Assembly: GCF_032444005.1 (NCBI RefSeq)
Contig: NC_091283.1
Span: 185,690,001-185,754,000, forward strand
DNA from: Ranitomeya imitator
Lineage: Eukaryota
DNA: 64,000 nucleotides
Direction of reading: 5' to 3'
The first letter of the stretch is position 1; every line of letters starts with the position of its first letter. A program made the translations under genes and the position numbers. A model generated the notes under the pieces. That model did no database searches. It was not told where the DNA came from and saw only the letters and a list, made by a program, of their open reading frames with translations. Shown in pieces: positions 1-62,529 of this stretch.

Positions 1-199
1 CATAACGGATGAGGGCTTCGGCACAGGCCCTGCGGTCACCCAGGACGCTGTACATCAGGGGAGTCCTCCCAAGTTGGTCCTCCTGGTCAGTCAGATCGGG
101 GCTGCAGCCGATAAGGCGCAGGAGAGTCGCCTTGTCCCCGGTGACAGCGGCTGCATGGACAGGAGAGGCCAGAGAAGAGCCCTGGGGCGGCCCACTCAT
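1..199 (-). CDS. invs: Inversin-like ankyrin-repeat protein, N-terminal 66 aa (5' partial, runs off the left edge)
   Basis: The minus strand from ATG at 199 reads MSGPPQGSSLASPVHAAAVTGDKATLLRLIGCSPDLTDQEDQLGRTPLMYSVLGDRRACAEALIRY. This matches the inversin N-terminus as I recall it (human GSSLASQVHAAAVNGDKGALQRLI...EDQFGRTPLMYCVLADR). There is no stop before the window edge. Orthologue versus paralogue status is unresolved. Confidence 0.9.
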   Translation of the reverse strand, partial: MSGPPQGSSLASPVHAAAVTGDKATLLRLIGCSPDLTDQEDQLGRTPLMYSVLGDRRACAEALIRY

Positions 200-423
200 C
201 CTGGGAACAGCCGAATTCCCCAGAACGGCTACAATCCTACAGTCTCTATGGCAACAGCAGCGGTTACTTCTACAGTGCGGCAGGAGATAGCCGCATCTCT
301 ATGACAACAGACGTTCTATCCGCGGCGGCTGTCGTCTATGGTGGAGCTGCGCGCATGCGCTCTAAGCAGACGTATGACTTGTGGCGTCTGAGCCCCGGAA
401 GTCGCATTCTGCACGCAGCTGTC
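200..423. promoter_or_regulatory. Compact bidirectional promoter between inversin-like and SEPHS genes
   Basis: Only 224 nt separate two divergent ATGs. The interval is CpG-rich and carries X-box/RFX-like GTCTCTATGGCAAC (242-255) and ATCTCTATGACAAC (295-308), NRF1-type GCGCATGCGC (351-360) and ETS CCGGAAGT (395-402). Confidence 0.75.
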
Positions 424-679
424 ATGGCGGCCGGTTCTCTGCCTGCTTCAATGGCGCCTTACTTTCCGGGGTACCGGCCGTTTGACCCCGAGTCTCTGGG
501 TTTGGGGGCCGCCTTCCGCCTCACATCGTTCTCCGATTTGAAGGGCTGAGGCTGTAAAGTCCCGCGGGAGACTCTGCTCAGGCTCCTGGCGGGACTGGAG
601 GACGGAGAACCCGGCGAGGGTGGTCGCCTGGACCCGGGGGGCCCCTGTGCGGTGCAGGAAGGAGGAGTCCCACGGCTGG
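424..679 (+). CDS. sephs2: SEPHS exon 1 with Sec UGA at 547-549
   Basis: gtcATGg Kozak context; [10 protein letters not shown]...[27 protein letters not shown]...VPRL; donor GTGAGC at 680. Confidence 0.92.
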
Positions 680-3600: not shown

Positions 3601-6600
3601 TGAAAGGGTTAACTCCCATTTCACCCGATCTGCAGGGACAGGGGGAGTGGTAGTTTAGCCCAGGGGGGGTGGCTTCACCCCCTCGTGGCTACGATCGCTC
3701 TGATTGGCTGTTGAAAGTGAAACTGCCAATCAGAGCGATTTGTAATATTTCACCCATTATAACGGGTGAAATATTACAATCCAGCCATGGCCGATGCTGA
3801 AATATCATCGGCCATGGCTGGAAATACTAGTGTGCCCCCACCCCACCCCTCCGATCGCCCCCCCACCCCCCCGATCTGGCCGGTACACTGCTCCGGCTCC
3901 CCTCCGTCCAGTGCTCCGCTCCCCCCCGTGCTCGTGCCCGCTCCCCCCGTGCTCCAATCACCCCCCCGTGCTCCAATCACCCCCCCTGCACTCCGATCCA
4001 CCCCCCCCGTGCTCCGTTCCACCCCCCCGTGCTCCATTCCAGTCCCCCCGTGCTCCGTTCCACGCCCCCCGCGCTCCGTTCCACCCCTCCCGCGCTCCGA
4101 TTCCTCCCCCCGTGCTCCGATCCCCCCCCCCGTGGTCCCCCCCCACCCTATCATACTTACCGATCCAGCCGTGGTCCCGTCCGTCTTCTCCCGGGCGCCG
4201 CCATCTTCCAAAATGGCGGGCGCATGCGCAGTGCGCCCGCCGAATCTGCCGGCCGGCAGATTCGTTCCAAAGTGCATTTTGATCACTGAGATATAATCTA
4301 TCTCAGTGATCAAAATAAAAAAAATAATAAATTACCCCCCCCCCCCCTTTGTCACCCCCATANNNNNNNNNNNNNNNNNNNNNNNNNNNNNNNNNNNNNN
4401 NNNNNNNNNNNNNNNNNNNNNNNNNNNNNNNNNNNNNNNNNNNNNNNNNNNNNNNNNNNNNNNNNNNNNNNNNNNNNNNNNNNNNNNNNNNNNNNNNNNN
4501 NNNNNNNNNNNNNNNNNNNNNNNNNNNNNNNNNNNNNNNNNNNNNNNNNNNNNNNNNNNNNNNNNNNNNNNNNNNNNNNNNNNNNNNNNGTATTCTGGTC
4601 CTCTGCGGATTTTTCCGCTGCGGATTTGATAAATCCGCAGTGCTAAACCGCTGCGGATTTATGGCGGATTTACCGCGTTTTTTTCTGCGCATTTCACTGC
4701 GGTTTTACAATTGCGATTTTCTATTGGAGCAGTTGTAAAACCGCTGCGGAATCCGCACAAAGAAGTGACATGCTGCGGAATGTAAACCGCTGCGTTTCCG
4801 TGCAGTTTTTCCGCAGCATGGGCACAGCGATTTTTGTTTCCCATAGGTTTACATTGAACTGTACACTCATGGGAAACTGCTGCGGATCCGCAGCGTTTTC
4901 CGCAGCGTGTGCACATACCTTTAGAATTAGGCTATGTGCACACGGTGCTGATTTGGCTGCGGATTGGCCGCTGCGGATTCGCAGCAGTGTTCCATCAGGT
5001 TTACAGTACCATGTAAACATATGAAAAACCAAATCCGCTGTGCCCATGGTGCGGAAAATACCACGCGGGAACGCTGCGTTGTATTTTCCGCAGCATGTCA
5101 ATTCTTTGTGCGGATTCCGCAGCGTTTTACACCTGTTCCTCAATAGGAATCCGCAGGTGAAATCCGCACAAAAAACACTGGAAATCCGCGGAAAATCCGC
5201 AGGTAAAACACAGTGCCTTTTACCCGCAGATTTTTCAAAAATGGTGCGGAAATATCTCACACGAATCCGCAACGTGGGCACATAGCCTTAGGGTTAGGGT
5301 TGGAATTAGGGTTGTGGTTAGGGTTAGGGGTGTGTTGGGGTTAGTGTTGTGGTTAGGGGTGTGTTGGGGTTAGGGTTGTGATTAGGATTATGGCTACAGT
5401 TGGGATTAGGGTTAGGGGTGTGTTGGGGTTAGTGTTGGAGGTAGAATTGAGGGGTTACCACTGTTTAGGCACATCAGGGGTCTCCAAACGCAACATGGCG
5501 CCACCATTGATTCCAGCCAATCTCGTATTCAAAAAGTCAAATGGTGCTCCCTCACTTCCGAGCCCTGACGTGTGCCCAAACAGTGGTTTACCCCCACATA
5601 TGGGGTACCAGCATACTCAGGACAAACTGCGCAACAATTACTGGGGTCCAATTTCTCCTGTTACCCTTGTGAATCTAAAAAAATGCTTGCTAAAACATAA
5701 TTTTTGAGGAAAGAAAAATGATTTTTTATTTTCACGGCTCTGCGTTGTAAACGTCTGTGAAGCACTTGGGGGTTCAAAGTGCTCACCACATATCTAGATA
5801 AGTTCCTTGGGGGGTCTAGTTTCTAAAATGGGGTCACTTGTGGGGGGTTTCTACTGTTTAGGCACACCAGGGGCTCTGCAAACGCAACGTGACACCCGCA
5901 GACCATTCCATCAAAGTCTGCATTTCAAAAGTCACTACTTCCCTTCTGAGCCCCGAAGTGTGCCCAAACAGTGGTTTACCCCCACATATGGGGTATCAGC
6001 GTACTCAGGAGAAACTGGACAACAACTTTTGGGGTCCAATTTCTCCTGTAACCCTTGGGAAAATAAAAAATTCTGGGCTAAATAATTATTTTTGAGGAAA
6101 GAAAACGTATTTATTATTTTCACGGCTCTGCATTATAAACTTCTATGAAGCACTTGGGGGTTCAAAGTGCTCACCACACATCTAGATAAGTTCCTTTCAG
6201 GGTCTAGTTTCCAAAATGGGGTCACTTGTGGGGGGTTTCTACTGTTTAGGCACATCAGGGGCTCTGCAAACGCAACGTGACGCCCGCAGAGCATTCCATC
6301 AAAGTCTGCATTTCAAAACGTCACTACTTCAATTCCAAGCCCCGGCATGTGCCCAAACAGTAGTTTACCCCCACATATGGGGTATCACCGTACTCAGGAG
6401 AAACTGGACAACAAATATTGGGGTCAAATTTCTCCTGTTACCCTTGGGAAAATTAAAAAATTCTGGGCTAAATAATTATTTTTGAGGAAAGAAAACGTAT
6501 TTATTATTTTCACGGCTCTGCATTATAAACTTCTATGAAGCACTTGGGGGTTCAAAGTGCTCACCACACATCTAGATAAGTTCCTTTGGGGGTCTAGTTT

Positions 6601-9600
6601 CCAAAATGGGGTCACTTGTGGGGGGTTTCTACTGTTAAGCCACATCAGGGGCTCTGCAAACGCAACGTGACGCCCACAGAGCATTCCATCAAAGTCTGCA
6701 TTTCAAAACGTCACTACTTCACTTCCGAGCCCCGGCATGTGCCCAAACAGTGATTTACCCCCACATATGGGGTATCAGCGTACTCAGGAGAAACTGGACA
6801 ACAACTTTTGGGGTCAATTTCTCCTGTTACCCTTGGGAAAATAAAAAATTGCAGGCTAAAAGATCATTTTTGAGAAAATAATTTTTTTTTTTATTTTCAT
6901 GGCTCTGCGTTATAAACTTCTGTGAAGCACTTGGGGGTTCAAAGTCCTCACCACACATCTAGATTAGTTCCTTTGGGGGTCTAGTTTCTAAAATGGGGTC
7001 ATTTCTGGGGGATCTCCAATGTTTAGGCACACAGGGGCTCTCCAAACGTGACATGGTGTCCGCTAATGATTGGAGCTAATTTTCCATTTAAAAAGCCAAA
7101 TGGCGTGCCATCCCTTCCGAGCCCTGCCGTGCGCCCAAACAGTGGTTTACCCCCACATATGGGGTATCAGCGTACTCAGGACAAACTGGACAACAATATT
7201 TGGGGTCCAATTTCTCCTATTATCCTTGGCAAAATAGGAAATTCCAGGCTAAAAAATCATTTTTGAGGAAAGAAAAATTATTTTTTATTTTCATGGCTCT
7301 GCGTTATAAACTTCTGTGAAGCACCTGGGGGTTTAAAGTGCTCAATATGCATCTAGATAAGTTCCTTGGGGGGTCTAGTTTCCAAAATGGGGTCACTTGT
7401 GGGGGAGCTCCAATGTTTAGGCACACAGGGGCTCTCCAAACGCGACATGGTGTCCGCTAACAATTGGAGCTAATTTTCCATTCAAAAAGTCAAATGGCAC
7501 GCCTTCTCTTCCGAGCCCTGCCGAGTGCCCAAACAGTGGTTTACCCCCACATATGAGGTATCGGCGTACTCGGGAGAAATTGCCCAACAAATTTTATGAT
7601 CCATTTTATCCTACTGCCCATGTGAAAATGAGAAAATTGAGGCGAAAAGAATTTTTTTGTGAAAAAAAATTACTTTTTCATTTTTACAGATCAATTTGTG
7701 AAGCACCTGAGGGTTTAAAGTGCTCACTAGGCATCTAAATTAGTTCCTTGGGGGGTCTAGTTTCCAAAATGGGGTCACTTGTGGGGGAGCGCCAATGTTT
7801 AGGCACACAGGAGCTATCCAAACGCGACATGGTGTCCGCTAACGATGGAAATAATTTTTCATTCAAAAAGTCAAATGGCGCTCCTTCCCTTCCGAGCCTT
7901 ACCATGTGCCCAAACAGTGGTTTACCCCCACATATGAGGTATTGGTGTACTCAGGAGAAATTGCCCAACACATTTTAGGATCCATTTTATCCTGTTGCCC
8001 ATGTGAAAATGAAAAAATTGAGGCTAAAAGAATTTTTTTGTGAAAAAAAAGTACTTTTTCATTTTTACGGATCAATTTGTGAAGCACCTGGGGGTTCAAA
8101 GTGCTCACTATGCATCTAGATAAGTTCCTTGGGGCGTCTAGTTTCCAAAATGGGGTCACTTGTGGGGGAGCTCCAATTTTTAGGCACACGGGGGCTCTCC
8201 AAACGTGACATGGTGTCCGCTAAAGAGTGGAGCCAATTTTTGATTCAAAAAGTCAAATGGCGCTCCTTCCCTTCCAAGCCCTGCCGTGCGCCAAAACAGT
8301 GGTTTACCCCCACATATGAGGTATCAGCGTACTCAGGACAAATTGGACAACAACGTTCGTGGTTCAGTTTCTCCTTTTACCATTGGGAAAATAAAAAAAT
8401 TGTTGCTAAAAGATAATTTTTGTGACTAAAAAGTTAAATGTTCATTTTTTCCTTCCATGTTGCTTCTGCTGCTGTGAAGCACCTGAAGGGTTAATAAACT
8501 TCTTGAATGTGGTTTTGAGTACCTTGAGGGGTGCAGTTTTTAGAATGGTGTCACTTTTGGGTATTTTCAGCCATATAGACCCCTCAAACTGACTTCAAAT
8601 GTGAGGTGGTCCCTAAAAAAAATGGTTTTGTAAATTTCGTTGTAAAAATGACAAATCGCTGGTCGAATTTTAACCCTTATAACTTCCTAACAAAAAAAAA
8701 TTTTGTTTCCAAAATTGTGCTGATGTAAAGTAAACATGTGGGAAATGTTATTTATTAACTATTTTGTGTCACATATCTCTCTGGTTTAACAGAATAAAAA
8801 TTCAAAATGTGAAAATTGCGAAATTTTCAAAATTTTCGCCAAATTTCCGTGTTTATCACAAATAAATGCAGAATTTATTGACCTAAATTTACCACTAACA
8901 TGAAGCCCAATATGTCACGAAAAAACAATCTCAGAACCGCTAGGATCCGTTGAAGCGTTCCTGAGTTATTACCTCATAAAGGGACACTGGTCAGAATTGC
9001 AAAAAACGGCAAGGTCTTTAAGGTCAAAATAGGCTGGGTCTTGAAGGGGTTAATATAAACATTTTTATTTTTTTTTGTCCCCAGGGTCGCATTGCCTGTG
9101 CCAACGTGCTGAGTGACCTCTATGCCATGGGGATTACGGAGTGTGACAACATGCTGATGCTGCTGAGTGTCAGCCAGAAGATGACGGAGGAGGTAAGGCC
9201 GGCAAATGGTTTCTTGACCCTTGTGACACCTTAATGTTTGCATGCTTTGACTCAATGTAGCAGACTTCCTGAGAGCTGACAGAGATGTCCACCATGATGA
9301 CATGTAAAGTCCCCCAGATAATTTCCCCATCAGGTTTCATGTGGGCCTCGCGCTCGGGTGGCTCGCTTGCCGCGGGCCCTCGTGCTCAGGTGGCTCGCTT
9401 GCCGCGGGCCTCGCGCTCAGGTGGCTCGCTTGCCGCAGGCCTCGCGCTCAGGTGGCTCGCTTGCCATGAGCCTCGCGCTCAGGTGGCTCGCTTGCCGCGG
9501 GCCTCGCGCTCAGGTGGCTCGCTTGCCGCGGGCCTCGCGCTCAGGTGGCTCGCTTGCCGCGGGCCTCGCGCTCAGGTGGCTCGCTTGCCGTGAGCCTCGC

Positions 9601-14251: not shown

Positions 14252-17200
14252 CTAGGAAGGAAATGGGGAGGTGATGGTAAGAATCACGTAAGAGCAAGCA
14301 ATTAATTTGTCTCCCCACCTACATTACTATGGGTGTAAGTACCGGCCTCACAACAGTGTCTAATTACCCAACTGATGCCATAAAATGGCAAAAATGAAGC
14401 CACGCCATGTACCAAATATACTGCAATACAAAAAATGTATCGCTAGTGTAAGTTCCCTTAGGGGACTCGGAAAAAAAAAAATATATAGTTTCACCATGTC
14501 TGCAATAATCCTATCTAAAACTATTTATCCTGTACAATAAAGCAAAAAAAAAACCCCTCAGCTTTACGTTTTTTTGGTGAAAGCACCTCCTGCAATTAAA
14601 ACATAGTATGGGCCTTTATATAAATCAATAGCTCAGCACCCAGACAAAAAAAAAGCCCTTACACTTGTCTACTACTAGAAAAATGGAAGAAGAAAAAAAA
14701 GTTACAGGTCTCAAAAAAAAGCAGCATGAACCAAATTTTTTTTTTCTCTACAAATTTCATAAATTTGATTTATCTACCCCTCTAATCAGTCTATATGGAC
14801 ATGTAGGCCATAGGAAGCTGAATAAAATATCTGTGATCCAATGTCTTACTCCAGAGAAATCCTCTTTTCTTTCTCGCCTCATTGGGGGACACAGGTAACC
14901 ATGGGTGTATGCTGCTGCCACTATGCAAATAAAGAAGTAACTCTTCCCCGGCAGTGTACACCCTCCGACAGGCACCTCAGTTTTTGCTTAGTGCCTGTAG
15001 GAGGCGGACCTGGATCTAACACCAGATCCGCATTTTGTTTACAGGGATTTGCTGTGTGTTATTAATCATTTCCCCCTTTCTTTTTCAGATACTTTTCTTC
15101 AGGGTAACAGGGTGCAGTTTTTTTCTCACCCTGTTTTCCCCACGTTGAGCGACCGAGAGAGCATTGTGGTATCACCCACATCGCACCCTCTCGGACCCGC
15201 TGGGCAGGACTTTGTCCCCTGTCACCCTTCGGGTGTTCAGGGTGACCTTTCCTCTGTGGCCAGTCCTGCCCATTTCCCCTCCTCATCCCTCTCCTCAGAG
15301 TGGGCTGAGAGAAAGACGGCGGTCACTTCCAGTGACCCTCTCCCCCTGTTTAGGGGTGTACGCCGTCTTCTGCGCCGGATTTCGTGGCGCGGGAAGGAGG
15401 ACTTCATCCCAGGACCCTCTACTCTGACAAGGGCTCCTGATGTGTTCCTCAACCTCAGGTAGGGAATCTTCAATCAACATTTAGTGGGCAGCTCAGGATG
15501 ACCAGTAACCCCCCCCACCCCCCCAGCGATCTCTTAGGAGGGCCTCTGCTTTCTATGGAGTCACCTTTATTCTCGCGTCGCTTCGGTCGCCACACGGCAG
15601 GCATCCTTTATTTTCCCCCCCTTCTATTTCAAACCCCTTCGGGTGCGCGCCATTTTTTTCTTACTACAGGCAGCCTTTTGGCGCCCGGCTCACCACGCCC
15701 CCTTGCGGCATTGTCCCGCCCTGCATCCCCGCGGCCAGGAGTCTCTCGGGGGCGTTCTTCTTCTCTCCCCTTCGGCGCTTGTACACGCCCACCTCATCGC
15801 GTTGTTCCCGCGCTCCACAGGCCGACTTCATCTTCCTGCCAGCGTCTCCTCACATCGCGTGGGACACGAGGATCCCTGGGGGACACAGACTTCTGCGGCT
15901 GCCACTGTGTTTTCGGTAGGCTCGGCGCTACTGCTCTCTCGGGCTCTACTCCTCCCTGCAGTACTTCTCCGCACCTGGACAAGGTAATATCTCTACCTAT
16001 GTCCGACCCCGCTCCAGGCTATTCCACTACAGTCATCCACTACGCCTGCACTCACTGTAAGAAAAAGTGGGCCTCAGGTCAGCCTTCTCCTTTCTGCCTG
16101 TCCTGCGTTCCTCCCACCATGTCAGCCCCTCAGGAGGCTCCCAGATCTCGGGATGAGTGGGCTGTTGCAATGTCTCAATCAGTGTCAGACCTGACTAAAA
16201 TGTCTCAGTCCCTGGTCCAGGCACTTGAACGTATCCCGCTTCTCTCTAATGCCACCAGTGCCACTAACGCCTCACACGGCGATTCGCTCGCACCTGTCCA
16301 AGACCCTCACAGAGGCAGACTTGAGAAAAGAGACAAAGAAAAAAAAGACCCTATCTAGATCCACTTCCAGTTCACCGGACCACACCGGGATACCCCTATC
16401 TGCCCATTCCCCCTCCTCGCAGGCGGACGTCGGGTTCAACAACACTACTTCTACACACTGGGAAAACCCTGGTAAGCGTTTCCCTGGCAGGAAACGGCTG
16501 GACATTTTATACCCTTTTCACTCCGATCTTGTCAGCAAATGGTCCGAGTCTCCTAAGGTCGACCCGCCTGTGTCCAGGCTATCTGCTCAGACGGTTCTGT
16601 CTATTCCGGACGCGGCTTCTCTTAAAGGGACTCTGTCACCCCCTCCAGCCGTTAGAAACTAAAAGAGCCACCTTGTGCAGCAGTAATGCTGCATTCTGAC
16701 AAGGTGGCTCTTTTAGTTTTTGGTGCAGTCAAAGCAGAAATAAAGCGTTTTATAATTTCGCAAAAATACCTGTCTTTAGACAGGGAGGCAGGTCTTAACC
16801 CCCCTGCTGCACACGCCACACTTCCGTCACTCAAATCTTCTTCGGCGCCGGGCACCGCCCCCTCCGCACTGTTTTCCAATCAAATTCTGCGCCTGCGCTG
16901 TTTAGTTCTGGCAGGCGCAGTGAGCGCTGCCCGTCTGACCTCAGATGCAGTCTTGCAGATTGCGCCTGTGTGGCCACCCACCTTGTGAATCCCAGCCCCG
17001 CACAGTGAATAATGCATAACACACTGCGGGGCTGGGATTCACAAGCTGGGTGGCCGCACAGGCGCAGTCTGCAAGACTGCATCTGAGGTCAGACGGGCAG
17101 TGCTCACTGCGCCAGCCCCTGGCAGAACTAAACCGCGCAGGCGCCGGATTTGATTGGAAAATAGCGCGGAGGGGGCGGCGCCGAAGAAGCTTTGAGTGAA

Positions 17201-20200
17201 GGCAGTGTGGCGTGTGCAGCAGGGGGGTTAAGACCTGCCTCCCTGTCTAAAGACAGGTATTTTTACGAAATTATAAAACGCTTTATTTCTGCTTTGACTG
17301 CACCAATAACTAAAAGAGCCACCTTGTCAGAATGCAGCATTACTGCTGCACAACGTGGCTCTTTTAGTTTCTAACGGCTGGAGGAGGTGACAGTCACTTT
17401 AAGGACCCCACGGACAGACAAATTGAGGCATAAGCCAAATCGGTGTTTGAGGCTTCTGGAGCCTCCTTCTGTCCTAGTTTCGCTTCTACATGGGTAGCGA
17501 AAGCTGTGTCAGCCTGGGCCAAAACCCTGCGCAGAGGCATTTTGGCCTCTGCTCCTGTTGAGGAACCGGATTTAGCAGATCAGATTTCTCTCGCGGGTAA
17601 ATATCTCATGAATGCCTCCCTTGATGCGGTGGCCTGCTCGGCTAGGGCTAACAGTAACATTGTGGCCATTCGCTGGGTTCTTTGGCTAAAAGCGTGGAAC
17701 GCAGATCCTGCTTCTAAAAAAAAAAAAAAAATCCCTCACTGGTCTGCCCTTCCAGGGTTCTAGACTCTTAGGCACGCAGTTGGATCAAATGATCTCGGAC
17801 GCTATGGGTGGTAAGAGTACCTCCTTACCCCAGTCCAAGCCTAAACGTTCCTTCAACAGGAGGGGCCCCCAGTCCTTTCGTCCCTTTTGGTCCTTTGCCT
17901 CCGCAGGAAACCCCAACCAGGACCGGTCGGTCTTCCTCACAAGCAGACCGGAGGAAGCCTTCTTTCAGGCCTCCCCCGCGCTGGAGAGCTAAGAGCCACC
18001 CCTCAAAACCATCTGGACCTCGTGGCCACAGGTTTTCTAATAAATGATGGGTCGCCCCCACCTAGAAATCCCTCCAAGGTGGGAGGCCGGCTTCATCTGT
18101 TCTTAGCCATCTCCGGATTCGGCACTTCAGGATGGGATCTCTACGCTTGGTGGTCGCGTCAATGGAACAGGGAGAGTTTGTGTTCCGTGGCCATCGGGGA
18201 TGCGTACCTACACGTTCCTATTTGCGTACAGCATCAGAGATTCCTCCGGTTCGCGATCCAAGAACTTCATTACCAGTTCACGGCTCTCCCTTTCGGACTG
18301 GCGTCTGCTCCTAGGGTCTTTACGAAGGTCATGTCAGCTGTCAAAGCCATTCTGCGTTCAAAGGGGATTCTGGTAATCTCATACATCGACGACCTCTTGA
18401 TCAAGGGTTCATCCCGTCGGGATTGCAGCCAGAGCCTCCAGCTTACTCTGGACACGCTTCTTTGCCTCGGCTGGATAATCAACTACCAGAAGTCTTCCTT
18501 GATTCCAACCCAGCGTCTGGAGTTCCTGGGCATGGAATTCGACACATCTCAGGCTCAGGTCTTCCTCCCCAAGGAGAAGTTCCTTTCTCTTCGTCGTGTC
18601 AGAGCACCAAAGGGCCCGAACCCTCTGTCCCTCCACCTGGCCATGAGGGTTCTGGGGAAAATGGTCGCTTCTATGGAAGCGGTCCCCTATGCCCAGTTCC
18701 ACTCTCGTGCCCTCCAGCTGGCCCTTCTGGCTGCCTGGGACAGGAACCCACTTTCCCTGGACCGCCCGCTTTGCCTCTCTCCCAGGGTGAAAGTCTTTCT
18801 CTTGGTGGACGCTGTCCACCTCCTTTCTGCGCGGGAGGTCATTTCTCCCTCCCTGCTGGCAGGTTATCACCACCAATGCCAGCCTCCAAGGTTGGGGAGC
18901 GTTTTTTCTCCACCTCACGGCCCAGGGCCGCTGGACTTCTCAGGAGGCGTCCCTCCCTATCAACCTCTTGGAAATCAGAGCCATCTTCCTAGCCCTCATC
19001 CGCTGGGAGTCTCTCCTCTCAGGAAAACCTGTCCGCATTCAGTCGGACAACGCCACAGCGTGGCTTACATAAACCAGGGAGGGACTTGCAGCAGACAAGT
19101 CATGATGGAAGTGGCAAAAATTCTGCGTTGGGCGGAGGGTCACGTTCCCTCTCTATCAGCCGTCCACATCCCAGGGGTGGACAATTGGAAAGCTGACTTT
19201 CTAAGTCGCCAGGGGAACATGGCGGGCGAGTGGTCCCTTCAATCTTCAGCCAGATTTACCAGCGGTGGGGCGTCCCAGATGTCGACTTCATGGCCTCCCG
19301 GGCAAACCACAAGGTTCCCCAGTACATTTCCAGATCTCGGGATCTGATGGCCGTTGGATGCGACGCTCTCGTGATCTCGTGGGCCCAGTTCCAGATGCCT
19401 TATCTGTTCCTACCCCTCCCCTTGATCCCAAGGGTCATAAAAAAGATCAAGTCGGAAGGGGTCCCCGTGCTCTTCGTACCACCAGATTGGCCTCGCAGGG
19501 CCTGGTATGCGGAACTGGTGAACATGCTATCGGACGTTCTGTGGAGACTTCAGGATCTTCTTTCGCAGGGGCCCCTCTTCCACCCGAATTCTCGGTCACT
19601 GAATTTAATGGTATGGCCGTTGAGGCCACGGTCCTGAAGGACGTGGGTTTTTCTCAGTGTCATCCAGACTATGATAAGAGCGAGAAAACCGGCTTCCTCG
19701 CGTATCTACCACAGATGTTGGAAGGCCTTTTTCCGGTGGTGTCAGGACAACAGTCTGTTTCCTATGACCTTTTCCCTTTCATCCCTTCTCAGTTTCCTTC
19801 AAGCAGGTCTCGATTCGGGACTTTCCCTTAGCACCTTGAAGGGTCAGATTTCCGCTCTGTCCATCCTTTTTCAAAGAGACCTGGCCTCCCTTCCTCAGGT
19901 AAGGACCTTTATCCAGGGGGTCGCTCATATAGCTCCCCCTTATCATTCTCCTATCGAGCCTTGGGATCTCAACCTCGTGTTAGACGCCCTCCAGCGTGCG
20001 CCTTTTGAACCAATTCAGGACATTTCCTTCTCACTTCTATCTTGGAACATAGCCTTCTTGGTCGCCATCACCTCCATTAGAAGAGTATCGAAGTTGACGG
20101 CATTATCCTGTCATTCTCCCTTTCTAGTCCTGCACCAGGACAAGGTGGTTCTTCGACCGGTTCCTTCTTTTCTACCAAAGGTAGTTTCGGCTTTTCACAT

Positions 20201-23200
20201 CAATGAGGACATTGTCCTCCCTTCCTTGTGCCCTTCCCCTGTTCATCCCTTGGATAAATCTCTTCACAAGTTGGATGTGGTCAGGGCTATCCGGATTTAT
20301 TTCTCCAGAACTACTTCTTTTCGTCAGGCCGATGCTCTGTCTCGGAAGGGCGTCGAAAGGGGCTCCCTGCCTCTAAGTCCACAATTGCTCATTGGATCCA
20401 TTCGGCGGTTCTGGAGGCATACCGTGTCCAAAACAAACGGCCTCCTTCGGGGGTGAAAGCTCACTATACCCGGGCTGTGTGAGCTTCCTGGGCACTTCGT
20501 CACCAAGCTTCGGCCTCGCAGGTTTGCAAGGCCGCAATGTGGTCATCCATTCACACCTTTGTAGAATTCTACATGGTGCATACTCAGTCTTCTGCGGACG
20601 CGAGCCTGGGTAGGAGGATACTGCAGGTGGCGGTTTCTGACCGGCCGACCTAACTCCTCTTTTTCTGCAGAATATCCCGCCCTAGGGACTGCTTTTGGAC
20701 GTCCCATGGTTACCTGTGTCCCCCAATGAAGCGAGAAAGAAAGAGGGATTTTTGGTTCCTACCGTAAAATCTTTCTTGGAGCCTTCATTGGGGGACACAG
20801 CACCCTCCCTTGAAGTTGTACCGTGTTGGCCAACGTGCCGTTGTTGTGGGTTGGTATATAGGTTGAGTTTTATATTACTGTTCCTACTACTGCTTTTGCA
20901 CCAACTGAGTTGCCTGGTGCCTGTCGGAGGGTGTATACTGCCGGGGAGGAGTTACTATTTCTTTATTTGCATAGTGTCAGCCTCCTAGTGGCAGCAGCAT
21001 ACACCCATGGTTACCTGTGTCCCCCAATGAAGGCTCCAAGAAAGAGATTTTACGGTAAGAACCAAAAATCCCTCTTTTTCTCAATATGTAAATGAGCTGT
21101 TAAGATCTATGGCCTAGACACAGCTCATTTACATAAAGAATGTGGATTTCTTTGGAATAAGATGTCGGATTGCAGATATAAAGGTCTCATTTTGTTCAGC
21201 TTCCTATGACCTACATGCCCATATAGACTGCTTAGGACAGTAGCGCCAGCTGCTAGATCCACTGAAAACCCTACCCAAGGTTGGAATCACAGTAATCAGC
21301 AGAATCGGGCTGTCAGGTCATTTTTACCACTCAGTAAAAGTGGAAAGAACAAGATCCTAAAAAAAGATGGAGTTTTATTTTTCTCTCTTGCTTCATTGCG
21401 GGACACAAGAAACCATGGGTGTATGCTGCTGCCACTATGCACAAAAAAAGTTTGTAACTCCCCCGCAGTGTACACCCCACGGACTGGCACTAGGTTAATC
21501 AGTTTCAGCTTAGCGTCAGTAGGAGGTGGATGCGGGGCTGCTCTCGGCCCTGTTTTCTATCTTTTTAGGTTGTCGTTTTACTAATAATTTCTATTTTTCA
21601 GATTCAGCTTGTGATCTAGGCGACTGAGTGGTTGTCACTCCCCTTCCCCCCACTGATTGAGTCACTACTGTACCCTCTTATGTCTTAACAAGCAGGACTC
21701 TATCCCCCCCTAACACATCAAGAGTGTTTGGGGTATCCTCCCTGAAGATAGGCAGACTGGTCCTTGCCACTACACCTGGCCAGCTCGCCCTCCGAGCAAG
21801 TCGTGCAGGGTAGGAAGACGGAACAATCACCTGCCAGTCAAGTCCTTTGATGTCCATCTTCCATCACTGGTTTGCAAAGAAGGATTCAGGATCTTCATGA
21901 CAGGGGGCGTCTATGTACACACCAAAGCCAGCCACCCGTAACAGGATCCAACAGATTCTCCTCGGCATGATGAGTTGCTCCTACCTGGGAGGACTCTTGG
22001 GGTGGGTGGCAGACTCCTTTTAATTTCAAGACGAATAGATATCTGTAGTAAATGACACCTGGGTCCGAGATGTCTTCTACACTCTAGATTTTTCAAGTCC
22101 CAACCACCAAAGAATGCTTCATTCGTCCCCGGGTTTTTCAAGGCTCTGTTCACTCTCCAAGATCGGCGTCATCGTCTCCGTTCCAACACGAGAGAGCTTT
22201 TCAGGTTTCTATTCAGACCTGTTCATGGTTCCAAAGAAGGATGGCTCAGTTCGTCCCATCTTGGATCTCAAATTATTAAACAGGTATGTGCGACTTCGTC
22301 ACTTCAGGATGGAGTCCCTTCAATCGGTAATGGCCTCCAGGGAGCCAGAGGAATTCCTCTGCTCGGTGGACTCTCAGGATGCCAACTTGCACATTCCCTC
22401 CGCACCAGAGGTTCCTTCTTTTCACAATTCTGGAATCCCATTTCCAGCCATTCTGCGCAGCAGGGGCATTCTTGTCACCCCTATCTAGACTATATTCTCA
22501 GCAGGCAGCATCTCCTCGGCATGCCAGGAGAGTCTACATATTACTGTGGACACCCTTTCTCATCTGGGCTATCAAAACTGCAACGTTGTCTGATACCGGA
22601 TCAACGTATTGTTTTTCTGGGAATGCTTTTAGACACAGCCCAAGCAAAAAAATGTTCCTACCCAAGGAAAAGTTTTTAACGCTCATGTGCAGGATTCATT
22701 CTTTGAGGCAGTTCACCTTGTTCCCTCGGCTTCTGCATGAGCGTACTAAGCAAGATGATTGCCTCACTGGAAGCAGTCCCGTTTGCTCCATTTCACATGC
22801 GTCCTCTTCAACCTGTCTCATCTTGCTAGAAGGAAGAGTTGATCTGTTCCCTGGAACGTATTGTCTCAATTCCCTCATGGATAAAGAAGTTCCTGGGAAG
22901 GTGAGAATGTTCCTCGTTAATTCATCTCAATAGCCCTTTCCTACCTGTTTCGTAGGAAGATGGAGACAATGGATGCCAACTTACTCTGCTGGGCACCCGT
23001 ATTTCAGGATTTAACAGGCCAAGGTCGATGGGCCGCTCATGAATGGTCTCTTCCAATCAATGTTCTGGCACTAGGAGCAATATTTCTTGCTCTGCTCCAT
23101 TGGCAGGAACTTCTCTACAGTTATGCGATTTGAGTCCAGTCAAAAAATGCCATGGCGGTGGCATATGTCAATCACCAAGGGGGAACTGGAAGCCGGACAG

Positions 23201-32200: not shown

Positions 32201-35200
32201 CTTGACAGGGGTGGCAGTGTTTCTGCAAGAAAGCAGCTCCTTTCGTCTTGCACAATACACATTAAGGGCGCTCACAGTGTCTCGGCCTCCAGCAGCTTCT
32301 CCTTGAGATCCTGCTCAGCTCTTGCTTTTCTATAAGTAACAGATATAGAGAGAGGGGTGAACAAGAGGAGGCAATGCTGAAGGGGGTAAATCCCCCCAAA
32401 GCCGGTCACCTACCTGTCCCCAACCCCCTGCAGGAAATCGACTTCTGTTGGAACGCTCCGGACTTCAGTTTCCTCCTGCAACAGTAAGGCACAAATCATT
32501 AGATGACAGTAGGGATGAAGATGGCAGCTGGCGGGCGCGAGTACGTCTCCCTCACCCGCAGTCTGACCCCATGTGTAGCTGCCGAGTTCATCATCCGATG
32601 CCTCTCCTTTTCCAGGGTCAGGTTTGCTTCCATCAACCTTTGCAATTCCTTTAGGATATCATTCAGCAGAAAGACATCCATCAACAAGGGGGAAGGAAGA
32701 AGACGGCACCATACACAAAAAAAACAAAAAACACTGAGCGGCAGCAACATCTGCTCCCAAGACAGAATCATGGATGACGGGATTTGGGAAAAAGTGGCTG
32801 AAACCTAAGAAACAGCGCCCCACCCGACTATAGGCCATGTCATGCATTGCATTCGCTTAAAGGGGCCTACCAATGTCTTACAGCTGAGCAGTTAACTCAG
32901 CTCCACTCACTGATTGGCTGCGGCCAGCTCCTATTACCTGGGTGCTGACAGACGTGCGGTCTCACCTGCTCGGCTCGGGGTGGCCCCGCGTGATTTCGTG
33001 CTGGCCCTCTCAGCGCTTCGCACATACTTTGGGTCAGAGTTTCACAGGAGGACATAGAGGTCCCAGGGCTGTTAGCCTAATGACACACAGCACAGCAGTC
33101 AGGCCGGGGCCGAGCCGAGGAGAGAGCGGAGGATAGCGGCAGCGCCCCCAACAGGTCATCTAAGCATTCACTACTCCCTTAGGTGCTTTTATTACTATAC
33201 CCAGCGGAGCAGCACAGGACATACGGACCACCCACACCGGATAACAATTTAAATATTTTTCTTCATGATTGGCTGCAGCGGTCAATTACTATAGACGTGA
33301 CATTACTGCTGCTGCGCTAAAATTTGACAACGATGTTGAGGGAAGAAGCGCCCCCATACATGTTAGATTTAGATAGGGGTATTAATGTATATGGGGGTCC
33401 TATAAGCTCCATCCACACTAGCACTGTGGGTTTCCATAACTTATAGGCTGAGACTTGTCACAGCTTCTCGTATAGTGGAGGCCTACAGTGTGAACAGAGC
33501 CTTAAACAGCGAACCCCAGGCACAATGCGGAGCGACACAACATGGAGAAAATGCTATGGTGTGACTACGGTGCAGAGACCATGGAGGGTGGGAACGAGCA
33601 GCTCAGGACCCAGTGTGTTGGCCGGGGCACGGATATTACTGTACAGGAAGCCCACAGCCCGGGGAGAGTCCCCGCTACGTATTACATGGCAGCCTATCCA
33701 AGGGTGTAAGGAGCATGAAGGTGCAGGAAGAAGCGGGCAGTCACCTCGGAGGGTCCCTCGGCCATGGCCTCGTCTTCTCTGGTCGCTGTCGCCTCGGATA
33801 GGTGTTTTCTTGCCTCCTCCAGGTGACTTTGCAGGGAGTCGCGCTCGGCCGATAACCTCAGCACCAGGCTCTTGGCTTCACTGAACTTGAAAGCGATGAA
33901 CTCGCGCTCTTTCCTCTGCGTCTCCTGAAACTCCAGCATCTCGCCGTGCCTCTTCCTGAGCATGGTGTTACTCTGCTCCAGAGCCACTGGGGGGGGGAGA
34001 GAAGAAATGGAATGCGTCTCAGACCCTGCACTGGGCGGTACACGGGGAGCATAACGGTCCTAACACCTGCGCAGCAGATCAGCCTTACTGCCATCCCCCC
34101 AAAAGGTCTAACACTTTCTGATGCACAAACAAGTCTAGAATGTCCAGGAACTGTCCAGGTTTTCATACTCTTTAACTTGGCTGTTTGCCTTCATCAGCAT
34201 TCTGCCAGCACTATAGGTGCTGGAATTTTCTTTTGTTCCCAGGAAACACTGCTTCTACCATTGTTCTACTACTTGTCTGCCTAGAACTAACATTTCAGTT
34301 CTCTGTTAGCGCCTGTATACAGTTTGACAGAAACGAGTTCAGAAAAGACACAGACACACACCCCGACTTCCCAATAGAGCGACAGAGACACGCTCCCACT
34401 TCCCGGTAGAGCGACAGAGACACGCTCCCACTCCTGGTAGAGCGACAGAGACACGCCCCCACTTCCCGGTAGAGTGACAGAGACACGCTCCCACTCCTGG
34501 TAGAGCGACAGAGACACGCCCCCACTCCTGGTAGAGCGACAGAGACACGCCCCCACTCCTGGTAGAGCGACAGAGACATGCCCCCACTCCTGGTAGAGCG
34601 ACAGAGACACGCTCCCACTCCTGGTAGAGCGACAGAGACACGCCCCCACTCCTGGTAGAGCGACAGAGACACGCCCCCACTCCTGGTAGAGCGACAGAGA
34701 CACGCCCCCACTTCCCGGTAGAGCGACAGAGACACGCTCCCACTCCTGGTAGAGCGACAGAGACACGCCCCCACTTCCCGGTAGAGCGACAGAGACACGC
34801 TCCCACTCCTGGTAGAGCGACAGAGACACGCCCCCACTCCTGGTAGAGCGACAGAGACACGCCCCCACTCCTGGTAGAGCGACAGAGACACGCCCCCACT
34901 TCCCGGTAGAGCGACAGAGACACGCTCCCACTCCTGGTAGAGCGACAGAGACATGCCCCCACTTCCCGGTAGAGTGACAGAGACACGCTCCCACTCCTGG
35001 TAGAGCGACAGAGACACGCCCCCACTCCTGGTAGAGCGACAGAGACACGCCCCCACTCCTGGTAGAGCGACAGAGACATGCCCCCACTTCCCGGTAGAGC
35101 GACAGAGACACGCTCCCACTCCTGGTAGAGCGACAGAGACACGCCCCCACTCCTGGTAGAGCGACAGAGACACGCCCCCACTTCCCGGTAGAGCGACAGA

Positions 35201-38200
35201 GACACGCCCCCACTTCCCGGTAGAGCGACAGAGACACGCCCCCACTCCTGGTAGAGCGACAGACATGCCCCCACTTCCCGGTAGAGCGACAGAGACACGC
35301 TCCCACTCCTGGTAGAGCGACAGAGACACGCCCCCACTCCTGGTAGAGCGACAGAGACACGCCCCCACTTCCCGGTAGAGTGACAGAGACACGCTCCCAC
35401 TCCTGGTAGAGCGACAGAGACACGCCCCCACTCCTGGTAGAGCGACAGAGACACGCTCCCACTCCTGGTAGAGCGACAGAGACACGCCCCCACTCCTGGT
35501 AGAGCGACAGAGACACGCTCCCACTTCCCAGTAGAGCGACAGACAAGCCCCCACTACTGGTAGAGTGACAGACAAGCCCCCCACTTCCCGATCGAGCGAA
35601 AGAGACATGCCCCACTTCCCAGTAGAGCGACAGACAAGCCCCCCACTTCCCGGTAGAGCGACAGAGACACGCCCCCACTACTGGTAGAGTGACAGACAAG
35701 CCCCCCACTTCCCGATCGAGCGAAAGAGACACGCCCTACTTCCCAGTAGAGCAACAGACAAGCCCCCCACTTCCCGATAGAGCGACAGAGACACGCCCCC
35801 ACTACTGGTAGAGTGACAGACAAGCCCCCCACTTCCCGATAGAGCGAAAGAGACACGCCCTACTTCCCAGTAGAGCAACAGACAAGCCCCCCACTTCCCG
35901 GTAGAGTGACAGAGACACGCTCCCACTCTCTGGTAGAGCAACAAACACCCCCCACTCCTGGTAGAGCGACAGACAAGCCCCCCTCTTCCTGGCAGAGTGA
36001 CAGAGACACGCTCCAACTCCTGGTAGAGTGATAGACACCTGCCCCCACTTTCGGTAGAGCGACAGAGATACGCCGCCACTAAAGGCACAGGGACCCTCTA
36101 AGCACCGGTTAGAAATAAGGGGACAGTACACTAAGAAGCTGAGGCAGTGTTCACATTTGCTTCCCTTCAGAACAGAAGCTGTAATGCTGTGCTAGATCAG
36201 TCACACAACGGACCCCACTGACTTGTAGAGGGGTCAATCAGGTTATGCTGAGGAATATGCCAGTCTGACTGGACAAAGTCTGTGAAAGAGGCATTGATGC
36301 AGATGTGAACAGAGCGGCACATTAAAGGGTTAATATCATTTACAAAAAAAAAAGTCATATACAGTACAGACCAAAAGTTTGGACACACCTTCTCATTTAA
36401 AGATTTTTCTGTATTTTCATGGCTATGAAAATTGTACATTCACACTGAAGGCACCAAAACTATGAATTAACACATGTGGAATTATACACTTAACAAAAAA
36501 GTGTGAAACAACTGAAAATATGTCTTATATTCTAGGTTCTTCAAAGTAGCCACCTTTTGCTTTGATGACTGCTTTGCACACTCTTGGCATTCTCTTGATG
36601 AGCTTCAAGCGGTAGTCACCGGGAATGGTTTTCACTTCACAGGTGTGCCCTGTCAGGTTTAATAAGTGGGATTTATTGCCTTATAAATGGGGTTGGGACC
36701 ATCAGTTGTGTTGTGCTGAAGTCTGGTGGATACACAGCTGATAGTCCTACTGAATAGACTGTTAGAATTTGTATTATGGCAAGAAAACAGCAGCTAAGTA
36801 AAGAAAAAAGAGTAGCCATCATTACTTTAAGAAATGAAGGTCATTCAGTCTGAAAAAATTGCGAAAACTTTGAAAGTGTCCCCAAGTGCAGTGGCAAAAA
36901 CCATCAAGCGCTACAAAGAAACTGGCTCACATGAGGACCGCGCCAGGAAAGGAAGACCAAGAGTCACCTCTGCTTCTGAGGATAAGTTTACCGGAGTCAC
37001 CAGCCTCAGAAATCGCAGGTTATCAGCAGCTCAGATTAGAGACCAGGTCAATGCCACACAGAGTTCTAGCAGCAGACACATCTCTGCAACAACTGTTAAG
37101 AGGAGACTTTGTACAGCAGGCCTTCATGGTAAAATAGCTGCTAGGAAACCACTGCTAAGGACAGGCAACAAGCAGAAGAGACTTGTTTGGGCTACAGAAC
37201 ACAAGGAATGGACATTAGACCAGTGGAAATCTGTGCTTTGGTCTGATGAGTCCAAATTTAAGATCTTTGGTTCCAACCACCGTGTCTTTGTGTGACGCAG
37301 AAAAGGTAAACGGATGGACTCTACATGCCTGGTTCCCACCGTGAAGCATGGAGGAGGAGGTGTGATGGTGTGGGGGTGCTTTGCTGGTGACACTATTGGG
37401 GATTTATTCAAAATTGAAAACATACTGAACCAGCATGGCTACCACAGCATCTTGCAGCGGCATGCTACTCCATCCGATTTGCGTTTAGTTGGACCATCAT
37501 TTATTTTTCAACAGGACATTGACCTCAAACACACCTCCAGGCTGTGTAAGGGCTATTTGACCAAGAAGGAGAGTGATGGGGTGCTACGCCAGATGACCTG
37601 GCCTCCACAGTCACCAGACCTGAACCCAATGAAGATGGTTTGGGGTGAGCTGGACCGCAGAGTGAAGGCAAAAGGGTCAACAAGGGCTAAACATCTCTGG
37701 GAACTCCTTCAAGGTTGTTGGAAGACCATTCCTGGTGACTACCTCTTGAAGCTCATCAAGAGAATGCCAAGAGTGTGCAAAGCAGTCATCAAAGCAAAAG
37801 GTGGCTACATTGAAGAACCTGGAATATAAGACATAATTTCAGTTGTTTTACACTTTTTTGTTAAGTATATAATTCCACGTGTGTTAATTCATAGTTTGGA
37901 TGCCTTCAGTGTGAATTTACAATTTTCATAGTCATGAAAATACAGAAAAATCTTTAAATGAGAAGGTGTGTCCAAACTTTTGGTCTGTACTGTATAATAA
38001 GGGCTCCACCAAGCTACTGAACTATGGAGGGTTCAGGTCCGGACATCCCCACTGACTGCTCAAAATATGTGCAAAGTGAATGACCCCTGCAGGAGTGATC
38101 AGCAGGGTGTAGGGGCTCCACAGTAAGTCTATAGGTCTCACAGACAGTGGTATGCGGACTTTTCAGCCCATACTCACTCCTGCATGGCGAGTTAAGTAGT

Positions 38201-40214: not shown

Positions 40215-40561
40215 AGGGAACCTGTCACATAGTTCAGGCAGCGGGTCACTGAGCAGATAAAGTTTTATGGGAAATGATGTGGCGTAACTGGCGTCTTATT
40301 CCCCTGGTCATGTGGGGATATTGAGTCCAGTGGGCCGTCCTAATCAGTGACTGACAGCCTGCCTTGTATAAGTGTGCATACCAAGATAGCTGTCAGTCAC
40401 TGATTAGGACGGACCACTGGATTCAAACCCCCACATGACCAGGGGAATAAGACGCCAGTTACGCCACATCATCTCCCATAAAACTTTATCTGCTCATCTC
40501 CCCCTGCTCTATAACATGATGCCTGCAGACTGGACTGCATGGACAATGTGGCAGGTTCCCT
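40215..40561. mobile_element. TTAA-type (T2/Kolobok) MITE
   Basis: AGGGAACCTGTCACAT ... ATGTGGCAGGTTCCCT|TTAA; palindromic core. Confidence 0.75.
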
Positions 40562-40604
40562 TTAATAACAACTGTTGAAACTTATGCCCATCCGACACAG
40601 GCCA

Positions 40605-41351
40605 CCGGACGATGCCCACCTGATGCTGCCCCGATAATGGGCAATGCCCATCCGACATGGTCACCAGTGATGGGCGATGCCCACCTGACACAACCGCAGT
40701 GACGGGCGATGCCCACCTGACCCGGCCCCTGTGATGGGCGACACCACCGGACAAGGCACTGGTGACGGGCGATGCCCACCTGACACAGCGCTGGTGACGG
40801 GCTATGCCCATCTGCAGAAAACAAAGAACACCGAGCACACTACTGGTGACACAGCACTGGTGACGGGCGATGCCCATCTGACACAGCGCCGGTGACGGGC
40901 GATGCCCACCTGACCCGGCGATGGGTGATATCACCTGATGCGGAACTGGTGACGGGCGATGCCCATCTGACATGACCCCGGTGACGGGCGATGCCCACCT
41001 GACACAGCACCGGTGACGGGCGATGCCCACCTGACAGCACCAGTGACGGGCGATGCCCCCCAGACACGACCACAGTGAGGGGCAATGCCCACCTGACACA
41101 GCACCGGTGACGGGCGATGCCCACCTGACACAGCACCAGTGATGGGCGATGCCCACCTGACACAGCACCGGTGACGGGCGATGCCCACCTGACAGCACCG
41201 GTGACGGGCGATGCCCACCTGACACAGCACCGATGACGGGCGATGCCCACCTGACACGACCACGGTGAGGGGCGATGCCCACCTGACACAGCACCGGTGA
41301 CGGGCAATGCCCACCTGACAGCACCGGTGACGGGCAATGCCCACCTGACAG
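40605..41351. repeat. 32 bp minisatellite, left half
   Basis: Unit GTGACGGGCGATGCCCACCTGACACAGCACCG; more degenerate leftwards. Confidence 0.93.
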
Positions 41352-41663
41352 CAGGGCTGCCACTAGAAATTTTGGGGCCCCATAATGGCAAAATTTTCGG
41401 GGCCCCCTTGAGACTCCGCCCAGGCTCCACCCCAGCCCCGCCTCCAGGCTCCACCCCTCGAACTGTCCACAGTCCCACCGTTCTCTCTTGGAAAATCTCC
41501 ACTTCTCACCTATCACACATTGACAGTTCCCATCACCAGATCACATACATATATTTGGCCAAAAGATTTTTTAAGCCACCACCATAACACGGTAGACACT
41601 TTTGGCCGGGCCCTACTCTGCTGTAACCTATTAAATATTTGTTAAAATATGCAATACAATTTA

Positions 41664-45180: not shown

Positions 45181-45299
45181 ACACCCTATCACCATACCAG
45201 TGACAACGTCCAGTATAGCAGTCCTGCCAGTCACAGACCCTGGTGCACAGCAGCTGGTGCCCTCCGTATTACACCCCATGTCTCTGGCGGCCAGTGACA

Positions 45300-48375: not shown

Positions 48376-62529
<14,154 letters not shown>

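What the first reader, a model, noticed from the sequence alone, without database searches (positions are those of the whole stretch)
1..423. Hidden inversin-like gene head-to-head with a selenoenzyme gene across 224 bp
Seen: an open minus-strand frame from ATG 199 to the edge encodes an inversin N-terminus. The ORF track missed it because it lacks a stop. Its ATG is only 224 nt from the SEPHS ATG. Established: human INVS (9q31) is not next to SEPHS2, IKBKG or G6PD. Inference: this is a relocated or duplicated inversin sharing a very compact promoter with selenophosphate synthetase, which would couple a ciliary/left-right gene to selenium metabolism.
Basis: partly seen in the sequence, partly recalled or inferred. 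Interest (0 to 1): 0.75.

Follow-up and report, generated by a model that had tools for sequence, protein, structure and literature searches.

The report
Frog inversin retrogene beside sephs2
The "hidden" reading frame is the start of the ordinary frog inversin gene, which in frogs and salamanders is an intronless, reverse-transcribed copy; in frogs it sits back-to-back with the selenophosphate synthetase gene, so it is already annotated and not peculiar to this genome, though its origin seems undescribed.

Summary
Minus-strand ATG 199 opens a 66-codon ankyrin frame that runs off the window edge. It lies 224 nt from the sephs2 start, which is at 424, not 423.

- **Identity.** This is true inversin. 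A public 385-aa protein has the same first 66 residues, and more than 25 frog species carry a ~1000-aa "inversin", including the experimentally studied Xenopus laevis inversin-A.
- **Structure.** The coding sequence is one uninterrupted ORF in every frog locus read (Ascaphus, Rhinophrynus, Bufo, X. laevis, a close relative of this genome) and in two salamanders. Bird and caecilian INVS span 78–522 kb, and at least 13 intron positions could be placed in the bird. INVS lies between ERP44 and TEX10 in the bird and next to ERP44 in the caecilian.
- **Position.** In the frog loci read the order is ubl4a | invs | sephs2 where sephs2 was called. A conserved 224–291-nt CpG spacer separates invs from sephs2.
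- **Best reading.** This is a processed retrogene that relocated and apparently replaced its parent, probably running off the sephs2 bidirectional promoter.

The arrangement is frog-wide and not a duplicate special to this genome. A link to selenium metabolism is unsupported. No paper describing the retrogene origin was found. Interest is modest.

The parts
1..199 (-). First 66 codons of the frog inversin (invs) coding sequence. It starts at ATG 199-197 and continues beyond the window edge.
   Evidence: Identical to residues 1-66 of P0002. dN/dS 0.09-0.14 against other frogs.
101..106 (-). Codons 32-33, where the first coding intron of canonical INVS would lie. Here the sequence is contiguous.
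   Evidence: The bird's first coding exon ends at about aa 38, which maps to about residue 32 of P0002 and the window protein. The window ORF reads straight across that point.
200..423 (.). 224-nt spacer between the two start codons; presumed bidirectional CpG promoter.
   Evidence: GC 0.57 and CpG o/e 0.99. Blocks are conserved with Ascaphus (291-nt spacer) and X. laevis (281 nt).
242..255 (.). 14-mer that fits the X-box (RFX) consensus with no mismatch on the + strand. On the invs-sense strand it reads GTTGCCATAGAGAC, one of a series of CATAGA repeats.
   Evidence: The identical 14-mer occurs in the Ascaphus spacer.
295..308 (.). Second X-box-like repeat (one mismatch).
   Evidence: aligned with the Ascaphus and X. 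laevis repeats.
351..360 (.). GCGCATGCGC palindrome (NRF1-type site).
   Evidence: Three exact sites in 64 kb against 0.04 expected. Exact in Ascaphus; a near copy (GGGCGCATGCG) lies at the corresponding place in X. laevis.
424..679 (+). sephs2 (multi-exon SPS2a type) exon 1, with Sec codon TGA at 547-549. The GTGAGC donor at 680 is inferred.
   Evidence: Homologous exon 1 with the same ...KG-TGA-GCKVP in Ascaphus and X. laevis. Later exons hit AIRS and AIRS_C.

Best explanation
The frame is the 5' end of the normal frog inversin gene (invs, the NPHP2 orthologue). In frogs, and also in salamanders, the whole ~1000-1180-codon coding sequence is a single exon. That is the signature of a processed mRNA copy (a retrogene). 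In frogs it was inserted away from the ancestral ERP44-INVS-TEX10 locus, into the Xq28-like block ubl4a | invs | sephs2 - ikbkg - g6pd. The insertion predates the base of living frogs and may date to the common ancestor of frogs and salamanders. It appears to have replaced the multi-exon parent, making it an 'orphan retrogene'. It lies head-to-head with sephs2 across a conserved 224-291-nt CpG-rich spacer. It is therefore most likely transcribed from the sephs2 bidirectional promoter, which carries an NRF1-type palindrome and a conserved series of X-box-like CATAGA repeats. Shown here: identity, intronless structure, position, conservation, purifying selection. Inferred: retroposition as the mechanism, loss of the parent, and shared promoter use.
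For: - **Identity.** P0002 is 100% identical over residues 1-66 and inversin-like over 385 aa. Its cluster mate is named inversin. More than 25 frog species each show one ~1000-aa inversin at 66-77% identity to P0151 over 94-100% of its length, including X. laevis Inversin-A.
- **No introns.** The CDS span equals 3 x residues + 3 in Rhinophrynus (3039/1012), Ascaphus (2940/979, confirmed by translation), Bufo (3003/1000), a close relative of this genome (2955/984), X. laevis (3024/1007), axolotl (3480/1159) and Pleurodeles (3543/1180).
- **Canonical genes differ.** Bird INVS spans 77.7 kb between ERP44 and TEX10, and tblastn recovered 14 separate coding pieces, giving at least 13 introns. Caecilian INVS spans 522 kb next to ERP44. 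The first canonical intron position falls inside the window ORF.
- **Synteny.** sephs2 (AIRS domains) lies head-to-head and ubl4a (ubiquitin + Tugs) lies on the other side; sephs2 exon 1 was found by translation in X. laevis.
- **Spacer.** Motifs are conserved across three frog lineages.
- **Selection.** dN/dS is 0.08-0.14 within frogs.
- **Function.** Invs knock-down in Xenopus gives kidney phenotypes (PMC6505484).
- **Tree.** Frogs and salamanders each sit on a long stem (0.68 and 0.64) among short canonical branches. A frog + salamander clade is not rejected (p-AU 0.46).
- **Known kind.** Orphan retrogenes, and retrocopies driven by head-to-head bidirectional promoters, are described (PMC5470649).
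Against:
- Loss of the parent rests only on the absence of a canonical-type frog or salamander protein from two top-120 lists. No genome was scanned.
- No conserved poly(A) remnant or target-site duplication was seen. An A27 tract follows the stop in Ascaphus only.
- Salamander invs has no called neighbour within 10 kb, so a shared insertion site with frogs is not shown.
- The tree places neither group firmly.
- In the one assembly holding the identical N-terminus, the annotated ORF stops at codon 385 after an apparent 1-nt frameshift.
- The same CCATAGAGAC motif also sits at the Ascaphus ubl4a/lage3 promoter, so it may be a general promoter element and not cilia-specific.
- A non-coding 5' exon with its own promoter elsewhere cannot be excluded.
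Confidence: 0.85

Rival explanations
1. One reading: a second, relocated or duplicated inversin peculiar to this genome. Its shared promoter would functionally couple a ciliary and left-right gene to selenium metabolism.
For: Head-to-head arrangement across 224 nt. The locus differs from ERP44-INVS-TEX10.
Against: The same arrangement holds in Ascaphus, Rhinophrynus, Bufo and X. laevis. Each frog shows a single inversin in the protein searches. Sharing a CpG/NRF1-type housekeeping promoter does not imply a shared pathway. No test of co-regulation was possible.
Confidence: 0.04
2. In this particular genome the copy is a decaying pseudogene, with the frame breaking about 1.1 kb beyond the window edge.
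For: P0002, the only record with the identical 66 residues, ends at 385 aa. Its last residues read as a frame-shifted version of the sequence that relatives continue with.
Against: Three records at least 99% identical over the first 372 residues are full length at 966-986 aa. dN/dS over the window's 66 codons is about 0.1. A single-base indel is a common long-read assembly error. The gene has knock-down phenotypes in Xenopus.
Confidence: 0.1
3. Two independent retropositions occurred, one in stem frogs (landing next to sephs2) and one in stem salamanders (landing elsewhere). There was no single event in their common ancestor.
For: Separate long stems of 0.68 and 0.64 with no shared stem. No gene is called within 10 kb of invs in axolotl or Pleurodeles, although a head-to-head partner should stay close. 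Salamander proteins keep the canonical C-terminus that frogs lack.
Against: Parsimony favours one event. A frog + salamander clade is not rejected (p-AU 0.46, delta lnL 1.0). Frogs and salamanders share more odd residues at otherwise fixed columns than any other pair: 4 against at most 2, and 8 against at most 2 with axolotl alone. Salamander genomes are huge and sephs2 is often mis-annotated.
Confidence: 0.3
4. An old paralogue from the vertebrate genome duplications, kept only in frogs and salamanders, that lost its introns in place.
For: The trees place frogs outside the tetrapods in an unresolved position. The Xq28-like block has known paralogy with other chromosome regions (own knowledge).
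Against: Losing every mapped intron in place is far less likely than one retroposition. No such paralogue appears in any other vertebrate in the lists. The odd tree position goes with very long stems and open forks. Derived residues are shared with salamanders.
Confidence: 0.03

Closest known systems
Inversin (INVS/NPHP2); Xenopus laevis Inversin-A (INVSA_XENLA)
   Same: The N-terminal ankyrin array is the same. Frog orthologues carry the IQ motif and are named inversin in public records. The window's 66 residues match frog inversins almost residue for residue.
   Different: The coding sequence is a single exon, and the gene lies next to sephs2 and ubl4a instead of between ERP44 and TEX10. Frog proteins end soon after the second IQ region and lack the canonical C-terminal tail.
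'Orphan' retrogenes that replaced their parents (Ciomborowska et al. 2013; reviewed in PMC5470649)
   Same: Intronless copy at a new locus, under purifying selection, with no parental copy seen in the same lineage.
   Different: This case is in amphibians and is old (at least crown-frog age). Parent loss is inferred from protein lists, not from a genome scan. No poly(A) or target-site relic remains.
Retrocopies transcribed from bidirectional promoters of head-to-head neighbours (Carelli et al. 2016, as cited in PMC5470649)
   Same: Head-to-head insertion within a few hundred bases of a CpG-island gene start.
   Different: Shared transcription is not demonstrated here. The spacer also carries a conserved array of X-box-like repeats.
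SPS2b, the placental SEPHS2 retrogene that replaced multi-exon SPS2a (PMC3316567)
   Same: The same kind of event, replacement of a gene by its retrocopy. It involves the neighbouring gene of this very pair, in another lineage.
   Different: In this window sephs2 is the ancestral multi-exon form, and invs is the gene that has been retro-replaced.

Membership tests
Inversin (INVS/NPHP2) orthologue | N-terminal ankyrin-repeat array | tested here: met
   Pfam Ank / Ank_2 / Ank_4 on the 66 residues. Full arrays in P0002 and the frog orthologues.
Inversin (INVS/NPHP2) orthologue | Closest relatives are inversins, not other ankyrin proteins | tested here: met
   N-terminus-to-N-terminus matches in a phmmer search of 1.84 billion proteins are inversins. 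A full-length search returns only inversins.
Inversin (INVS/NPHP2) orthologue | IQ calmodulin-binding motifs after the ankyrin array | not testable with these tools
   This part lies beyond the window edge. PF00612 is present in most frog orthologues.
Inversin (INVS/NPHP2) orthologue | Conserved position between ERP44 and TEX10 | tested here: not met
   The window has sephs2 as neighbour, and frog loci have sephs2 and ubl4a. The bird has ERP44 and TEX10 and the caecilian has ERP44.
Processed (orphan) retrogene | Lacks all introns of the parental gene | tested here: met
   CDS span = 3 x residues + 3 in five frog and two salamander loci. At least 13 introns in the bird. The window ORF crosses the first canonical intron position.
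Processed (orphan) retrogene | Lies at a locus different from the parent's | tested here: met
Processed (orphan) retrogene | Poly(A) remnant and target-site duplications | tested here: inconclusive
   An A27 tract lies 335 nt after the stop in Ascaphus only; none in X. laevis. Such marks are expected to be erased at this age.
Processed (orphan) retrogene | Parental gene absent from the same genomes | tested here: inconclusive
   No canonical-type frog or salamander protein among the top 120 hits of two searches that list caecilian, lungfish and shark inversins. No whole-genome scan was possible.
Bidirectional (head-to-head) promoter pair | Divergent genes with starts less than 1 kb apart in a CpG island | tested here: met
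   ATG-to-ATG spacer of 224 nt, GC 0.57, CpG o/e 0.99. The spacer is 281-291 nt in X. laevis and Ascaphus.
Bidirectional (head-to-head) promoter pair | Divergent transcription start sites within the shared region | not testable with these tools

The most novel reading that the evidence does not exclude
Frog and salamander inversin is an ancient orphan retrogene, at least as old as living frogs and possibly dating to the frog-salamander ancestor. It replaced the ERP44-linked parent. In frogs it has since run off the sephs2 CpG promoter, which acquired a conserved array of X-box-like repeats. This would be a natural promoter swap of a nephronophthisis and left-right gene in the main amphibian model organisms, and it appears to be undescribed.
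Probability: 0.5. Interest if true: 0.5.

Novelty: new member of a known kind. Interest (0 to 1): 0.4.

Why it matters
Xenopus is a standard model for inversin/NPHP2 function in kidney, cilia and left-right patterning. If its invs is a retrogene with a borrowed promoter, then its regulation and its shortened C-terminus need not mirror the mammalian gene. That matters when Xenopus results are transferred to human disease. It would also be a clean, old amphibian example of a gene replaced by its own retrocopy. The neighbouring gene, sephs2, underwent the same fate in placental mammals. The gene and its position are already in public annotations, so the discovery value lies only in the evolutionary reading.

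Tried and rejected
- The PDB sequence search and the ESM Atlas search on the 66 residues gave only generic ankyrin matches.
- Earlier findings of this scan held nothing on inversin.
- The X. tropicalis record was withheld and one caecilian protein was not on record.
- DNA was not retrievable for most amphibian loci because the files were too large. Only Ascaphus, X. laevis and the bird could be read.
- Five literature searches (inversin + SEPHS2, + retrogene, + intronless; invs + intronless + Xenopus; amphibian retrogene replacement) found no description.
- A survey of retrocopies in non-mammalian chordates does not mention invs.
- The Xenopus RFX2 target paper and the three supplements held as text do not mention invs or sephs2. 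RFX binding therefore remains an inference from motif fit.
- I considered a cilia-specific X-box reading and weakened it, because the same motif lies at the Ascaphus ubl4a/lage3 promoter.
- The full-length careful tree did not finish. A careful tree of the first 620 residues was used instead.

Full report
**Observation.**

On the minus strand an ATG at 199-197 opens a frame of 66 codons with no stop before the window edge. The nearest in-frame stop upstream is 33 codons away, with no earlier ATG between. The ORF tool does not list frames that run off an end, which explains why this frame was 'hidden'.

The spacer 200-423 is 224 nt. The in-frame TGA (selenocysteine) is at 547-549.

**Identity.**

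Pfam sees ankyrin repeats in the 66 residues. PDB and ESM Atlas searches were only generically ankyrin.

A phmmer search of 1.84 billion representative proteins found P0002 (385 aa). It is identical to the window over residues 1-66 and inversin-like throughout. Other N-terminus-to-N-terminus hits are inversins of echidna, axolotl and a gecko. P0002's 90% cluster contains 'inversin [Rhinophrynus dorsalis]', 1012 aa (P0151).

Searching with that protein returned one inversin of about 1000 aa from each of more than 25 frog species, at 66-77% identity over 94-100% of the query's length. These include X. tropicalis and X. laevis Inversin-A. Canonical inversins of other vertebrates followed. Three masked records are at least 99% identical to P0002 over its first 372 residues and are full length at 966-986 aa. 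So this is the ordinary frog invs gene, not a hidden novelty.

The coding span equals exactly 3 x residues + 3 in every frog locus on record:

| Species | CDS span (nt) | Residues | Call |
|---|---|---|---|
| Rhinophrynus | 3039 | 1012 | 27 |
| Ascaphus | 2940 | 979 | 31; translated without a stop |
| Bufo | 3003 | 1000 | 36 |
| Close relative of this genome | 2955 | 984 | 34 |
| X. laevis | 3024 | 1007 | 62, 64 |
| P0002 | 1158 | 385 | 25 |

The same holds for two salamanders, axolotl (3480/1159) and Pleurodeles (3543/1180).

By contrast, INVS of the bird Malurus spans 77.7 kb. tblastn recovered 14 separate coding pieces, giving at least 13 introns, and parts of the protein were not recovered, so the true count is higher. 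The gene lies between ERP44 and TEX10. INVS of a caecilian spans 522 kb next to ERP44. The first canonical coding intron maps to about codon 32/33 of the window protein, so the window's own 66-codon frame already reads across a lost intron position.

**Position.**

In frogs the gene lies between ubl4a (ubiquitin + Tugs) and sephs2 (AIRS domains), head-to-head with sephs2. In Ascaphus, lage3 and ikbkg lie further out; in the close relative, ikbkg and ubl4a were called but sephs2 was not. In X. laevis the sephs2 exon 1 was found by translation.

This is the Xq28-like block. PMC3316567 reports that the ancestral multi-exon SPS2a is X-linked in opossum and that placental SEPHS2 is a retrogene.

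Ascaphus belongs to the earliest-branching lineage of living frogs (own knowledge). The arrangement is therefore at least as old as living frogs.

**Evolution.**

A careful tree of the first 620 residues gave these results:

- Frogs form one clade on a stem of 0.68 changes per site.
- Salamanders form one clade on a stem of 0.64.
- All canonical lineages have short branches.
- The position of both long-stemmed groups is unresolved.

A frog + salamander clade costs only 1.0 log-likelihood unit (p-AU 0.46). On the full-length quick tree the figure was p 0.12.

At columns otherwise fixed across vertebrates, frogs have 22 private changes and salamanders 26. The lungfish has 9 and the five other canonical groups 1-2 each. 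Frogs and salamanders share 4 odd states, more than any other pair (8 with axolotl alone). This is the burst of change usual after retroposition.

Whether there was one event in the frog-salamander ancestor or two parallel events is open. Salamander invs has no called gene within 10 kb. Salamanders also keep the canonical C-terminus that frogs have lost.

Within frogs the gene is under strong purifying selection. dN/dS is 0.08 between Ascaphus and X. laevis, and 0.09-0.14 for the window's 66 codons. Xenopus Invs knock-down gives pronephros defects and oedema (PMC6505484).

No canonical-type frog or salamander inversin appears in two top-120 lists that do include caecilians, lungfish and sharks. 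This suggests the parent is gone, but it is not a genome scan.

**Promoter.**

- The spacer is CpG-rich (o/e 0.99).
- Its length is conserved: 224 nt here, 281 in X. laevis, 291 in Ascaphus, and about 271-286 from the gene calls in Rhinophrynus and Bufo.
- Alignment of three frog lineages shows conserved blocks.
- One block is a GCGCATGCGC palindrome of NRF1 type at 351-360. There are three exact sites in 64 kb against 0.04 expected.
- The others are a series of CATAGA-core repeats. The best fit the X-box consensus: 242-255 with no mismatch and 295-308 with one. Three such sites lie in the Ascaphus spacer, including the identical 14-mer.
- The same motif also lies at the Ascaphus ubl4a/lage3 promoter. 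I therefore treat it as a conserved promoter element of unknown factor. RFX is only a lead, and the Xenopus RFX2 paper mentions neither gene.

Retrocopies driven by the bidirectional promoter of a head-to-head neighbour, and retrogenes that replace their parents, are both described kinds (PMC5470649). I found no paper applying either to inversin.

**Caveats.**

- In the one assembly that carries the identical N-terminus, the annotated ORF ends at codon 385. Its last residues read as a one-base frame shift of the sequence that relatives continue with. This lies about 1.1 kb outside the window. It may be an assembly error or a real lesion.
- A non-coding 5' exon cannot be excluded.

**Verdict.**

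The feature is the known, annotated frog inversin gene in its normal frog-wide position. What is of some interest is that this gene is an intronless retro-derived replacement sharing the sephs2 promoter region, which seems not to have been written up. A functional tie between cilia and selenium metabolism has no support.

Noticed in passing
outside the window, about 1.1 kb beyond base 1 (protein P0002): The public record with the identical N-terminus ends at 385 aa. Its last 9 residues look like a one-base frame shift of the sequence that the full-length relatives (at least 99% identical) continue with. This could be an assembly error or a real lesion.
   Followed up: partly
L001:13274-13300 (Ascaphus, 335 nt after the invs stop): A pure A27 tract follows the invs stop in Ascaphus. 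X. laevis has none. It is probably too clean to be a relic of the original poly(A) tail.
   Followed up: partly
L001:17287-17300 (Ascaphus ubl4a/lage3 start region): The same GTCACCATAGAGAC-type motif as in the invs/sephs2 spacer sits between two other divergent genes. This hints at a general frog promoter element.
   Followed up: no
frog inversin proteins (alignment): Frog inversins end shortly after the second IQ region and lack the last ~65-100 residues of canonical inversin. Salamander proteins keep them.
   Followed up: partly
loci (Rhinophrynus, X. laevis annotations): Gene models of 572 and 672 aa with G6PD domains reach to within 190-480 nt of the invs start. These are probably models that wrongly run through the sephs2 region, where the Sec codon confuses callers.
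   Followed up: no
window 15500-20500 and 36834-37829: A reverse-transcriptase-bearing element (RVT_1) lies at 17887-19347. A Tc1-like transposase in two pieces (HTH_Tnp_Tc3_2, DDE_3) lies inside the ikbkg region.
   Followed up: partly
window 5200-8700; 34300-36100; 40500-41500; 44300-45300; 46400-47700; 51700-53050: Several long tandem-repeat arrays show up as repetitive ORFs in all frames. The first expands a sephs2 intron. An N stretch lies at about 4350-4600.
   Followed up: no
window 4220-4229 and 60907-60916: Two further exact GCGCATGCGC sites. One is in the very GC-rich stretch 3800-4300 and one is in a repeat just upstream of a g6pd exon.
   Followed up: no
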